64,000 nucleotides of DNA, taken from assembly GCF_032062105.1 (NCBI RefSeq), contig NW_026930315.1, positions 310,001-374,000 on the forward strand. The letters are read 5' to 3'. Under the pieces are notes generated by a model. The model did no database searches and was not told the origin of the DNA. It saw nothing but the letters and a program-made list of their open reading frames with translations. The number at the start of each line of letters is the position of its first letter. Within the stretch, counting starts at the first letter, position 1. This DNA comes from Saccostrea cucullata. Taxonomy: Eukaryota. Shown piece after piece: positions 13,100 through 64,000 of the stretch. Both the position numbers and the translations under genes were made by a program.

Positions 13100-13268
13100 T
13101 ATGACATCGATTCAGTACTTTCAGTACTTTGATTATAGCTAAAAAAAAAAAATAAAATATCGGGATCGGGATCGGCATTTCGATTTGTATACACGAGGAA
13201 AGCACACTGACAGTGACAACACAGTGACTGTAAACCGTAAGTACACATCGTTGCATCGTTTCTTGCAG
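13100..13268 (+). promoter_or_regulatory. Putative core promoter and non-coding exon 1 of ZF gene A
   Basis: Motif GATTCAGTACTTTC..AATATCGGGATCG.CATTTCG.TTTGT..ACACGAGGAAAG..TTGCAG|GTGATT recurs upstream of each exon 2 (23968, 52620); Inr-like TCAGT; function inferred from position. Confidence 0.55.
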
Positions 13269-13770
13269 GTGATTTCTCTATTTTTATATGATTATATTTT
13301 CTCTAAACAGAATGATTTATATTTTGAATTATTTTTATCAACAGGGACCTTAAATTAGCAACATTTTTCGAGGTATTAATCAAAATCAAAATGGTAATCA
13401 TGGTAATTAGGTCCTGTACAATCACTACTCACTAGATTTAGCTACGTACATGTAGCTTGATTTATCTACTAAGCTTTATTTACCTATCTGATGCACAGGT
13501 ACTTGTGGACAGGACCCACCCCCCCTGATATTCACCCCGGGGCTTATTGGACATTTTTTTCAAAAATTATATTTATTACACGTATTCATCATGTGTACAA
13601 TATGAAAAAATCGTCAACATCCCGAAACAATCGGAGATAAATTATGTGGAGAAAATAAACCTGTTTACAGTAATGGCTGTGATTCTAGAACATTGTTGAA
13701 TAAAATGTAATTGAAAAGTATAACTACTGATTTGATCATGTGTTTCAGATATAAGAGCAAAAATTACATC

Positions 13771-13846
13771 ATGATGTCAGGAGTCCAGACTTGCCATGTA
13801 CATGTACCTTGTCAGGAATACCCTGTATCTAAAAGAGAGTCTACAG
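13771..13846 (+). CDS. Gene A coding exon 2 (exon 13749-13846): MMSGVQTCHVHVPCQEYPVSKREST
   Basis: tttcag acceptor and CAG|GTTGGT donor; ends in phase 1; paralogous to 33180-33234 and 55309-55378. Confidence 0.8.
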
Positions 13847-13859
13847 GTTGGTATAGGGG

Positions 13860-59826: not shown

Positions 59827-60651
59827 AGAAAAAAGGCAGCTTTTCCATCAAGATCGTATTCTCCAAGTGTGTCACAAACTCAAAGCAATGCTGAGAAGTT
59901 AAACCACTATAGTGCAAATGATAATCAAACTGAGATATTAGAAAGACACATCAGTATTCGTAGAAGTAAAAAGTCCATTAACTGTAACCACTGTGGCAAA
60001 ATTTTCAGTTTTTCATGTCAATTACAGAGACACATGAGGGTACATACTGGAGATAAACCTTTCAAATGTGATGTGTGTCTGAAGGCATTCAGTCAGTTTT
60101 GTACCTTACAGATGCACATGAGGACACATACAGGTGATAAACCTTACAAATGTGATGTGTGTGAGAAAGCATTCAACCAGGCATGCCACCTAGAGGCTCA
60201 TATGAGGATACATACAGGGGATAAACCTTTTAATTGTAACGTATGCAGACAGGCATTTGCTCTTTCGGGACATTTAAAGTATCATATGAGGACTCACACA
60301 GGTGATAAACCTTATACATGTGAGGTGTGTGGGAAGGCATTCCGCGACACAGGCACCTTAAATACACACAAGAGGACACATACAGGTGAAAAGCCATATA
60401 AATGTGATGTGTGTGGAAGACATTTCCCTCTACTGTCTAACTTTAAGAGACACATCAATAAACATACTGGTGAAAAGCCATATAAATGTGAATTGTGTAA
60501 AAAAGCATTTAGTGAAAAATCGAACTTGAAAAATCACATGAAGTTGCACACAAGTGATAAACCTTATAAGTGTGAAGATTGTGGAAAGGGATTCCTAGAA
60601 TTAAGGTGCTTACAGAAACACAGGAAGATACACACACGTGTTAAACCTTAA
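59827..60651 (+). CDS. Gene C zinc-finger exon a (8 C2H2 fingers)
   Basis: tttcag acceptor, phase 0, in frame with ORF 59812..60651. Confidence 0.9.
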   Translation, partial: RKKAAFPSRSYSPSVSQTQSNAEKLNHYSANDNQTEILERHISIRRSKKSINCNHCGKIFSFSCQLQRHMRVHTGDKPFKCDVCLKAFSQFCTLQMHMRTHTGDKPYKCDVCEKAFNQACHLEAHMRIHTGDKPFNCNVCRQAFALSGHLKYHMRTHTGDKPYTCEVCGKAFRDTGTLNTHKRTHTGEKPYKCDVCGRHFPLLSNFKRHINKHTGEKPYKCELCKKAFSEKSNLKNHMKLHTSDKPYKCEDCGKGFLELRCLQKHRKIHTRVKP

Positions 60652-62961
60652 GAGTGAAATTTATGGGGAGTTTCATTCAATTCCATACTTTCCGGAGTCA
60701 CATAATTATGAATGAGATGTGCATGGAAAAACATCTTTTGTGCACATAGGGACTTAAAATTAGCAGTTGGTGGAAACAAAGATTTTAAATAAGTTATCAG
60801 GAAATTGATAATCATGCTATAAGCATGAAAAGCAAATTGAAATGTATAGATTTGAATATAAGGATGAAGATTATCAGACGTTGTGACTTTTCCTTCACCT
60901 ATAGTGATTATCTTTGATTGGAATATTTGAATAATTAAAGATACAATGCAATCATTTTAATTTTCTTGTTTATAATTAATTAGCAGGAATTGGGGTAAAG
61001 TGATGATGCATAAAAAGGAATCATGAAAAATTAAAAAATTTAGCATGACTTGTGTTAATTTTTTCAATTTTTAAAAGAATTTGATTTCAAAAAAAAAAAA
61101 TTATGGAGAAAAATATGAATGGACCAAAAAATTTGATTTGATCTTTTTCAAAAGTTGTTAGAACATATTTTCACTTTTGCATGCTCGAGTTGAATTTTGT
61201 TTACATATATTAGCTTAAAAAAGTGACGTGACCTTGATATACTTGACACAACGAAAAGGTAGATACAACCTTTGTTTTTTCCGCACTTATATTGTGCAGT
61301 CTTTTCTTGCAGTTTGATTGTCACATATTAGCTATATACTTATAATTCTACTCCATACAACAAGTTGCGTGAGGTATAATGTTTTTACCCGTCTGTCAGA
61401 GTGTGAGCTTGTCAGTCTGTCAGTTCTGTTATTTATTTTTTTTTGTCAGCGCAACCACTCATAAACCACTGTACAGAATTTCGTTAAACTGTGGCAGATA
61501 CTTTGGCAGATATTTAAGACACAATGTGTAGATGTGCATATTGCCAGGAAATTCTGATTTCTTCATTTTTCCCGTCAATTTCCGCAATTTGTAACTTAGG
61601 GTTTTGACCATACCTTGTATATAGAGATAAACAGAACAACACAACTCTTTAAGCATGTTAAAAGTATTTCAAAGAGGACCATTCGATAATGTACGTAATA
61701 TACCAAGTAGTTACATGTTAACTGGTATGGCAAAGATTCGGAGGAAGACGAGAATGCACAACTTACGTTTTTTGTTAAACGATATTGCAAAAGGTACACC
61801 CCTAAGGTATTTCTATGCTCAATTAAGTTTATGTTAACATTGCTTAAAACAAGATAGAGAAATATGAGTGTTTACTTAAAAAGATTTTTTAAAATGTTAT
61901 TTTGTACGAATTATTTTAACAATCAAACCCAAGCCTTCATTTAAGTGAATTGATACAAATTGACAAAAGGCTTCATTAAGGGTGTACGGTTCAATTGAGT
62001 TTGATATAAAATACTGGTATTTTACAACACTTTTTTGTCAATTAATGATTCGAAAAATAAAAAAAACCAGTTATGCCAGCATGTACAATTTCAGCTGTTC
62101 TGAAAAAAATAAATTTTTATAGAAAAACAATAGAAAAACATGATTGATTATGCTTTTACTTCTGAAATACCACCAAAAATGTACTGAAATTACACCCTTG
62201 CAGTGAAAATACATTCAAGATTGTTCAAATCATGATCCACAATGAGGTCACAATGCTGAGCAGTTTTACATAAAAAATATTGTAAATATCTTTTATTATA
62301 TTCTTAAGAACAGCAAAATCATGATTGGTCATAGGCAGTGAGTGCAGACTTAACTTTGTTCAAATCATGACCATGGTTTGATAGGTTGGAGCCATAATGC
62401 ATGAGCAAAGTTTTACTTAGGAATATATTGGTCATATTTTAGTTGGACAGCTTGGGGTGAGGAGCCACAATGCAAGTTCAAATGTAAATAGCAATAAAAA
62501 CACAACTAGTCAAAGATGGATATGGAGATAACGAACAGTATTCAATCAAAGTCCATTAAACAATACAAAATAGGAGCAGAGCGAACACGGACCTCCGAAA
62601 TCTCAGAGGTTGGATCAGGTGCCATGGATGTGTGAACATCCTCTGTTGACTGTTCACACCCACCATATGCTCCTTGTCATGAAAGAAATATGGAAGCATG
62701 TTGATTTGAGTTTGTTCAAATCATACCCTCTCCCCTTTATTGAATGGTTGGGACCACATTTGTATTTAAACTTACCAAAAATCAAATGCTTTTAGCTTTT
62801 TTCACAGCCAAAGTGGTAAGTTGATCGATGTGATATTTGGGCCTCTTGTTTATGTATTATAGAACTTCAAAAAGGTTAAATGTTTTATCATGTTTTTCCG
62901 TAATTTTATGAGTAAGTAACTAAATATAAAATTACAACTGATTTTTTTTAATCATTTACAG

Positions 62962-64000
62962 AGAGAGATGGCAGCACTACCATTCAGATCTCAAACTCAA
63001 AGTATGTTATGTATTCAAAGCGATGCTGAAAAGTTGAACAATTATAGTGGAAATGACAATCTAACAGAAGTATCAGAAATGCATAACAATGTACACGTAA
63101 GTGCAGAGCCGCATATACATGTTAATGGAGAGCCGCATGAAAGTTACATCAGTGGAAAAGATTCGTCTCATTCAGATCATTTTCAGAAAGAATTTATGAA
63201 ACAAAATGGTAAATTTTATAAATGTTCTGTGTGTGAAAAGACATTCCTTCGACCTAGTTCCCTGCAAGCGCACATGAGAGTCCACACTGGTGAAAAACTT
63301 TATGAATGTGTTGAATGTAAAAAGACATTCAGTGGAAATCAATACTTAAGGGTACATATGAGAGTACATACTAATTCTAGAAAATGTGATGTGTGTGAGA
63401 AGACATTCAGCAGACCTTATAACTTACAGGCTCATATGAGGATACATTCAGGTGAAAAACCTCATGAATGTGAGGTATGCGGAAAAGCGTTCGCTGTATC
63501 AAAATACCTACGGAGACACATGAGTAAACATACTGATGAGAAACCTTATAAATGTAATCTGTGTGAGAAGGCATTCAAACAATCTATTACTTTACAGGAA
63601 CACATGAGGACACATACTGGTGATAAACCTCATAAATGCCACGTGTGTGGGAAGGCATTCTCTTTATCTGGATCATTTAGGCATCACATGAGGACACATA
63701 CCGGTGAAAAACTTTACAAATGCGACGTGTGTGGGAAGCCATTTTCTGACTCCTGTAACTTACAGAAGCACATAGAGACACATAGTGTCCTGAGAAATGA
63801 GAAGCTTTATGAATGCAATTTGTGTTTAAGATTATATTCTGATTTGAGTTCTTTACAGCAACACATAAAGATACATACTGATAATAAACCTTACCAATGT
63901 GATCTGTGTGAAAGAGCATATTTGAAAAAATCGAATTTGGATATTCATATGAGGAAACACACCGGAGAAAAGCCTTATAAATGTGATGTGTGTGGAACAG
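62962..64000 (+). CDS. Zinc-finger exon b (9 complete fingers, continues past the window); candidate alternative terminal exon of gene C
   Basis: tttacag acceptor, phase 0; manual translation REMAALPFRS..AEKLNNYSGNDN.. stays open to the window end; absent from the ORF track because there is no stop. Confidence 0.88.

What the first reader, a model, noticed from the sequence alone, without database searches (positions are those of the whole stretch)
13100..64000. Tandem C2H2-ZF family with an unrecognised two-exon N-terminal module and a KRAB-ZFP-like gene layout
Seen: three genes share one plan of putative UTR exon, exon 2 (MMSxV.xWHVPCxEYPLSDEExT, phase 1), exon 3 (EKEETVxNSHP..N..xNIK, phase 0) and one ZF exon. 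Each ZF exon opens with a related leader (AEKLN..S.NDNQTE). All splice phases join in frame, and the ORF track misses these small exons. Known: KRAB-ZFPs (small KRAB-A/B exons plus one ZF exon) and insect ZAD-ZNFs are clustered, fast-evolving families with an effector module, and KRAB-ZFPs silence transposons. Inference: this ~45-aa module, which I do not recognise as KRAB, SCAN, BTB or ZAD, may be a lineage-specific effector or cofactor-docking motif of an analogous bivalve family.
Basis: partly seen in the sequence, partly recalled or inferred. Interest (0 to 1): 0.8.

Follow-up and report, generated by a model that had tools for sequence, protein, structure and literature searches.

The report
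Oyster zinc-finger genes with shared mini-exons
A cluster of rock-oyster (Saccostrea) zinc-finger transcription-factor genes starts with two tiny coding exons that hold their reading frame across many gene copies, but the short tail they encode evolves almost freely, so it looks like a lineage-specific disordered leader rather than a new KRAB-like domain.

Summary
Three genes (g1, g2, g3) share the plan E2 (start codon, ends in phase 1), E3 (phase 1 to 0) and one large exon holding a leader and 8-11 C2H2 fingers. All six junctions are GT-AG and join in frame.

The plan recurs outside the window, just upstream on the same contig and on contig C11349. In all, 13 distinct E3-like exons in this genome are AG/GT-bounded, open, and 2 mod 3 in length. 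A Saccostrea echinata RefSeq model uses the homologous E3-to-ZF junction. Paralog exons are 70-90% identical, while their flanks are unalignable.

The "effector module" reading is weak:
- Neither exon nor the leader hits Pfam.
- dN/dS on E2+E3 is 0.4-3, and haplotype differences are 12 replacement to 2 silent.
- The E2 peptide is unrelated beyond MMS in the upstream gene.
- E3 net charge runs from -13 to +8.
- Conservation sits at splice sites, the 5'UTR and the start codon.

Two of the five ZF exons in the window (g0, g4) have no E2/E3 of their own. The leader matches only Saccostrea proteins among 1.84 billion representatives. The closest analogue is the fish FiNZ-ZNF family. No RNA evidence could be obtained.

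The parts
2955..4445 (+). g0 ZF exon: leader plus 13 C2H2 fingers, open frame of 496 aa. No E2/E3 of its own was found upstream.
   Evidence: the frame opens 2 codons before a pyrimidine-rich cag acceptor
13089..13369 (+). Cluster-specific conserved block upstream of g1 E2; probable promoter and non-coding exon 1.
   Evidence: only 4 copies genome-wide, all in this cluster or its alternative haplotype, all on +; CAG|GTGATT is conserved
13749..13846 (+). g1 exon 2: 22 nt of 5'UTR, then ATGATG at 13771; ends in phase 1.
14619..14698 (+). g1 exon 3: 80 nt, phase 1 to 0.
16377..17867 (+). g1 ZF exon: leader plus 11 or more fingers, 496 aa.
23970..24200 (+). Copy of the conserved upstream block about 9 kb before g2 E2; probable g2 promoter and exon 1.
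   Evidence: collinear copy on C13248
33158..33234 (+). g2 exon 2: coding from 33180, 55 nt of coding sequence, phase 1.
33218..36054 (+). 58-bp minisatellite in g2 intron 2, about 30 copies in four blocks. It is built from the 3' part of exon 2 plus the splice donor.
   Evidence: about 7 copies on the alternative haplotype
36931..36998 (+). g2 exon 3: 68 nt, phase 1 to 0.
45091..46242 (+). g2 ZF exon: leader plus 11 fingers, 383 aa.
55289..55378 (+). g3 exon 2: coding from 55309, with an in-frame TAG two codons upstream; phase 1.
56300..56367 (+). g3 exon 3: 68 nt, phase 1 to 0.
59827..60651 (+). g3 ZF exon: leader plus 8 fingers, 274 aa.
62962..64000 (+). g4 ZF exon: leader plus 11 fingers. 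It runs past the window end, with an open frame of 410 aa. No E2/E3 of its own lies in the 2.3 kb after g3.

Best explanation
This is a Saccostrea-lineage subfamily of tandemly duplicated Krueppel-type poly-zinc-finger transcription-factor genes.

Shown: each full gene has two mini coding exons, E2 (5'UTR, start codon, 18-26 aa) and E3 (22-39 aa). A large exon follows, encoding a family-specific leader and 8-13 C2H2 fingers. A non-coding first exon is probable but not shown.

Inferred: the mini-exons are genuine coding exons. They supply the start codon and a tail of about 45-65 aa that is low in complexity, mostly acidic and probably disordered. This tail is kept in frame but is almost free to change in sequence. 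Only short anchors persist: MMS, K-E/K-E/Q, G-N-S/P, N-Q-x-Q-K. Much of the nucleotide conservation serves splicing and translation initiation.

The fingers bind DNA, and their contact residues diversify between copies. The tail most likely acts, if at all, as a short linear or charged regulatory motif, in the manner of the fish FiNZ motif, and not as a folded KRAB-, ZAD- or SCAN-like domain. The cluster evolves by unequal exchange. This leaves ZF exons without their own 5' exons (g0, g4) and copy-number differences between haplotypes.
For: - Splice sites, phases and in-frame indels fit in g1-g3.
- The same plan is found in g-1 (L011: E2 964-1042, E3 1710-1789, ZF exon from 5906) and in C11349a.
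- An E3 plus ZF leader pair lies at C12452:78-80 kb.
- All 13 of 13 E3-like exons are AG/GT-bounded, open and 2 mod 3.
- Exons are 70-90% identical against 31-57% for flanks.
- ZF-exon frames close 2-14 codons upstream of the acceptor and the leader holds no start codon, so upstream coding exons are needed.
- The RefSeq model XP_061192798.1 of S. echinata joins the homologous E3 to the homologous ZF-exon acceptor.
- The ZF exons are canonical C2H2 arrays; the leaders and mini-exons have no Pfam hit.
- dN/dS is 0.40, 0.79 and about 3 between paralogs.
- Haplotype copies differ by 12 replacement and 2 silent changes.
- E3 net charge runs from -13 to +8.
- Contact residues diverge more than the rest of the fingers.
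- The leader profile hits only two proteins below 1e-10 among 1.84 billion representatives, both from Saccostrea.
Against: - There is no RNA evidence for any junction.
- dN/dS rests on about 22 silent sites per pair and is noisy.
- A short linear motif can be functional despite dN/dS near 1, so an effector role is not excluded.
- The S. echinata E3 copy is 90 nt long and frameshifted relative to the family frame. This could be a pseudogene, an assembly error, or a sign that the 5' part of E3 is not always coding.
- g0 and g4 lack the module, so it is not obligatory for the family.
- Whether the other E3-like exons (C1357, C19346 and the basic type) belong to ZNF genes is unknown, because only 3-kb loci were available.
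Confidence: 0.6

Rival explanations
1. One reading: E2 plus E3 encode a lineage-specific effector or cofactor-docking module. It recruits a silencing or activating complex, making this a bivalve counterpart of the KRAB-, ZAD- or FiNZ-ZNF families, perhaps aimed at transposons.
For: - The frame, start codon and a few anchor residues are kept across diverged paralogs whose introns are unalignable.
- The gene layout is KZFP- and FiNZ-like.
- There is a precedent: FiNZ is a 28-aa glutamate-rich motif with no known homology that marks TE-repressing ZNFs (bioRxiv 10.1101/2022.11.29.518450).
- Contact residues diversify.
- Retroelement insertions in the cluster differ between haplotypes.
Against: - dN/dS is about 1, and haplotype differences are mostly replacements.
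- E2 is unrelated beyond MMS in g-1.
- E3 charge flips sign.
- g0 and g4 lack the module.
- Only about 10-20 loci were found.
- The leader is seen only in Saccostrea.
- No recognised docking motif is evident; this last point is my own reading of the peptides, not a test.
Confidence: 0.2
2. Shared 5' exons with alternative terminal ZF exons: E2/E3 of one gene are spliced to either of two successive ZF exons (g3 to g3-ZF or g4-ZF; g-1 to its own ZF or g0-ZF). One N-terminus would then carry different DNA-binding arrays, as in Drosophila lola or mod(mdg4).
For: - g0 and g4 keep an intact phase-0 acceptor, the leader and long open frames (496 and 410 aa) but have no E2/E3 of their own.
- g4 starts only 2.3 kb after the g3 stop.
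- A third case of a ZF exon followed by another ZF exon, with no E2/E3 found in the parts held, lies on C13248.
Against: - There are no RNA data.
- The RefSeq model XP_062599930.1 for a g4-like paralogue uses a different short first exon, which is not present in the window.
- g0 and g1 both have an ATG just before finger 1 that could start a ZF-only protein.
- Poly(A)-like hexamers follow every ZF exon, although they are uninformative in AT-rich DNA.
Confidence: 0.12
3. E2 and E3 are not used as coding exons. They are relics or regulatory pieces carried along by segmental duplication, and the proteins start inside the ZF exon.
For: - There are no RNA data.
- Around E3, the g1 and g2 introns are nearly as similar (78% over about 550 nt) as the exon itself (82%).
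- Haplotype divergence in the exons (about 4%) is only mildly below that of the flanks (4.8-11.7%).
Against: - All 13 E3-like exons and all E2 copies keep their splice sites, frame and phase despite at least 7 independent indels. My estimate of the chance of this is below 0.001.
- The start context is kept.
- The leaders have no start codon.
- A RefSeq model in a congener uses the E3 junctions.
Confidence: 0.08

Closest known systems
FiNZ-ZNF genes of cyprinid fish (Wells et al., bioRxiv 10.1101/2022.11.29.518450)
   Same: Both have a short (28 aa), acidic, lineage-restricted N-terminal motif without known homology. In both it is encoded on a small exon ahead of one exon holding the finger array, and the genes are tandemly clustered, with diversifying fingers.
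   Different: FiNZ is highly conserved across about 700 zebrafish genes and sits on a single exon. Here there are two exons, tens of loci at most, little amino-acid constraint and a variable charge. No sequence similarity is evident. FiNZ's TE-repressing role was tested by knock-down; nothing has been tested here.
KRAB-ZFP genes of tetrapods
   Same: Both have small 5' coding exons followed by one large ZF exon. Both form tandem clusters with copy-number variation between haplotypes and faster change at DNA-contact residues.
   Different: There is no KRAB (PF01352) match. KRAB is a folded module of about 75 aa that binds TRIM28 and is under purifying selection. The module here is shorter, low in complexity and nearly unconstrained.
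ZAD-ZNF genes of insects
   Same: Both are lineage-specific, clustered, fast-expanding C2H2 families with an N-terminal add-on.
   Different: ZAD (PF07776) is a zinc-coordinating dimerisation domain with four conserved cysteines. There is no match here and no such cysteine pattern.
Drosophila lola / mod(mdg4) type loci
   Same: Successive ZF exons with intact acceptors lie downstream of one set of 5' exons (g3 then g4; g-1 then g0).
   Different: Those loci share a BTB domain, and their alternative splicing is documented. Here, shared use of the 5' exons is only a possibility.

Membership tests
Krueppel-type C2H2 poly-zinc-finger proteins | Tandem C-x2-C-x12-H-x3-5-H fingers with TGEKP-like linkers | tested here: met
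   PF00096 at 4e-42 to 2e-64 and PF13465 at 2e-71 to 2e-105; 8-13 fingers per exon.
KRAB-ZFP | KRAB-A/B box (PF01352) N-terminal to the fingers | tested here: not met
   no Pfam hit at E<=10 for E2, E3 or the leaders. They were scanned exon by exon; the joined peptide was not searched.
KRAB-ZFP | Gene layout of small 5' coding exons plus a single ZF exon, in tandem clusters | tested here: met
ZAD-ZNF | ZAD domain (PF07776) with four zinc-binding cysteines | tested here: not met
   no hit. The E2/E3 peptides hold at most one or two cysteines.
SCAN-ZNF / BTB-ZF | SCAN (PF02023) or BTB (PF00651) domain | tested here: not met
   no hit
FiNZ-ZNF | The 28-aa FiNZ consensus at the N-terminus | not testable with these tools
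   No FiNZ profile or consensus was on hand. The paper states that FiNZ is unique to cyprinids. The resemblance is one of kind, not of sequence.
FiNZ-ZNF | The N-terminal motif is highly conserved across family members | tested here: not met
   dN/dS is about 1, E2 is unrelated beyond MMS in g-1, and E3 charge is variable.

The most novel reading that the evidence does not exclude
The two mini-exons encode an oyster-specific short linear effector motif that evolved independently of KRAB, ZAD and FiNZ. It would tether a chromatin or transcription cofactor to rapidly diversifying finger arrays. In some loci the same N-terminus would be spliced to alternative ZF exons. That would be a further convergent N-terminal tag on a diversifying ZNF family, this time in molluscs.
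Probability: 0.15. Interest if true: 0.65.

Novelty: new variant of a known kind. Interest (0 to 1): 0.33.

Why it matters
Molluscs carry hundreds to thousands of poly-ZF genes, yet almost nothing is known about their non-finger parts. This locus is a clearly delimited, genus-restricted subfamily with a testable N-terminal tag. It also shows structural differences between haplotypes, ZF exons that have lost their 5' exons, and a minisatellite born from an exon-intron junction. If the tail proved to be an effector, it would be another independent invention of the KRAB/FiNZ solution. As the evidence stands, it is an ordinary example of a young, fast-evolving ZNF cluster. Its annotation needs care, because ORF finders miss the mini-exons.

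Tried and rejected
- Word-index protein searches with the g3 and g2 leaders found nothing within the allowed length range.
- The whole g2 ZF exon returned only generic ZNFs at about 50% identity, mostly vertebrate KZFPs. This says nothing about orthology.
Several E3-like loci are therefore known only as 3-kb pieces.
- XP_062599930.1 could not be located by exact look-up, and its first exon was not found in any locus held.
- The idea that the block at 13089-13369 is a transposon was rejected. It has only 4 copies genome-wide, all in this cluster or its alternative haplotype.
- No E2 was found upstream of E3 in the S. echinata locus.
- No E2/E3 was found for g0 or g4, even with nhmmer --max.
- All searches were made exon by exon and by reference, so a domain that spans the junction could have been missed.
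Full report
**What is in the window**

The window is G000:C12452:310001-374000 of a 1.17-Gb assembly. It holds five arrays of Krueppel-type C2H2 fingers, all on the + strand:
- g0, 2955-4445
- g1, 16377-17867
- g2, 45091-46242
- g3, 59827-60651
- g4, from 62962 to past the window end

Each array is one exon. 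Its frame closes 2-14 codons upstream of a pyrimidine-rich cag acceptor. Each opens with a related finger-less leader that has no start codon. Pfam sees only C2H2 families in these exons.

- E2 starts at an acceptor about 20 nt before a conserved ATGATG and ends in phase 1. Its coding parts are 76, 55 and 70 nt long.
- E3 runs from phase 1 to phase 0 and is 80, 68 and 68 nt long.
- All six junctions are GT-AG, and all length differences are multiples of three.
- A purine sits at -3 of the start codon in all five E2 copies seen. In three of them an in-frame stop lies two codons upstream.

Between paralogues the exons are 70-90% identical, while 300-nt flanks fall to 31-57%, which is unalignable. 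Around E3 of g1 and g2, however, about 550 nt of intron is nearly as similar (78%) as the exon (82%).

**Extent of the family**

nhmmer and profile searches recover the same three-part plan in two further genes:
- A gene just upstream of the window (g-1; L011: E2 964-1042, E3 1710-1789, ZF exon from 5906).
- A gene on contig C11349.

An E3 followed 1.4 kb later by a related leader lies at C12452:78-80 kb.

In all, 13 distinct E3-like exons were found. Every one is bounded by AG and GT, is open in the family frame, and has a length of 2 mod 3 (68, 71, 74, 80 or 119 nt). From the number of independent in-frame indels in E2 and E3, I estimate the chance of this at below 0.001 (my inference).

More ZF exons with the same type of leader lie on C7087, C4412, C12294, C11008 and C11468. 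All these counts are lower bounds.

Contigs C10019 and C2976, and the g2 part of C13248, are 90-98% identical to the window in non-coding DNA. I take them for the alternative haplotype. Upstream of g2, C13248 is arranged differently, so the haplotypes differ in gene content.

**Species and other species**

A profile of the leaders (A4) was searched against 1.84 billion representative proteins. It gave only two hits below 1e-10:
- XP_062599930.1 of Saccostrea cucullata. It is about 95% identical to the C7087 copy over the aligned parts.
- XP_061192798.1 of S. echinata.

The genome is therefore a Saccostrea, probably S. cucullata.

The S. echinata locus (L031) holds an E3 homologue at 11127-11216. 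The RefSeq model splices this exon to the homologous ZF-exon acceptor. This is independent annotation support for that junction type. That E3 is 90 nt long, though, and is frameshifted within the exon relative to the family frame. No E2 was found there.

**Is it an effector module?**

- E2, E3 and the leaders hit no Pfam family even at E<=10. They were scanned exon by exon.
- Summed Nei-Gojobori counts give dN/dS of about 3 (g1-g2), 0.40 (g1-g3) and 0.79 (g2-g3).
- The haplotype copies differ by 12 replacement and 2 silent changes.
- Exon divergence between haplotypes is about 4%, against 4.8-11.7% in the flanks.
- In g-1 the E2 peptide shares only MMS with the others.
- E3 net charge runs from -13 to +8 across the family.
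- The invariant letters lie at the E2 acceptor, 5'UTR and start codon, and at both ends of E3. This fits splicing and initiation signals as well as it fits protein function.

So the exons are very probably real and coding. What they encode behaves like a disordered, fast-changing tail with a few anchors, not like a domain.

The closest precedent is FiNZ. It is a 28-aa glutamate-rich motif on its own exon, and it marks about 700 TE-repressing ZNFs in zebrafish (10.1101/2022.11.29.518450). FiNZ is highly conserved; this tail is not.

**Finger evolution**

DNA-contact positions (-1, 2, 3, 6) differ far more than the rest of the fingers. For g2 against g3 the counts are 28/32 against 47/136 (p=5e-8). 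For g1 against the C13248 copy they are 15/40 against 23/170 (p=0.001). This is the usual mark of diversifying binding specificity.

**Open points**

- g0 and g4 have intact acceptors, leaders and long frames but no E2/E3 of their own. They may use the upstream gene's 5' exons, other 5' exons, or an internal start.
- A cluster-specific 250-bp block upstream of g1 and g2 is probably the promoter and exon 1. No such block was found for g3.

**Limits**

- No RNA data could be had.
- The contig could not be fetched whole.

**Verdict**

This is a new variant of a known kind of gene family, a lineage-specific N-terminally tagged poly-ZF family, and it is of moderate to low interest until the tail is shown to do something.

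Noticed in passing
window 33218-36054: A 58-bp minisatellite fills g2 intron 2, with about 30 copies in four blocks split by insertions. Its unit is the last ~45 nt of exon 2 plus the first ~13 nt of the intron, so each copy carries a decoy splice donor. The alternative haplotype (L009:6115-6542) has only about 7 copies.
   Followed up: partly
window 28750-30909 (-) and 38778-41593 (-): Two retroelement ORFs with reverse-transcriptase domains (RVT_1 at 5e-33 and 2.5e-24) lie antisense in g2 introns 1 and 3. Both stretches are missing from the collinear alternative-haplotype contig C13248, so they look like insertions that differ between haplotypes.
   Followed up: partly
window 18323-18640 and 46270-46335: Out-of-frame or post-stop finger remnants lie just after the g1 and g2 ZF exons. 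They are traces of array shortening or of unequal exchange.
   Followed up: no
L008:3851-4918 (C10019) versus window 59827-60651: The alternative-haplotype copy of g3 has 11 fingers in a 356-aa frame, against 8 fingers in 274 aa in the window. It is only 86% identical in the ZF exon although its flanks are 92-98% identical. Finger number therefore differs between the two haplotype copies.
   Followed up: partly
G000:C5374:137119, C1728:36975, C23363:5050, C2818:8501, C19687:57061, C11349:193013: There is a basic-charged subfamily of E3-like exons. All are 71 nt long, keep the same frame and splice sites, and have a net charge of +8. The genes they belong to are unknown, because no finger array lies within the 3-kb loci.
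   Followed up: no
window 7816-8828, 9311-9973, 52091-52585; L014:1000-3500: Satellite-like tandem repeats recur between the genes of the cluster and in the alternative haplotype (L008:1099-2825). They may have replaced the 5' exons of g0.
   Followed up: no
L031:11127-11216 (Saccostrea echinata): The RefSeq model XP_061192798.1 reads the E3 homologue in a different frame for its first two thirds and joins it to TE-like upstream exons. It also merges several finger arrays into 962 aa. It is probably a mis-modelled or decaying gene.
   Followed up: partly
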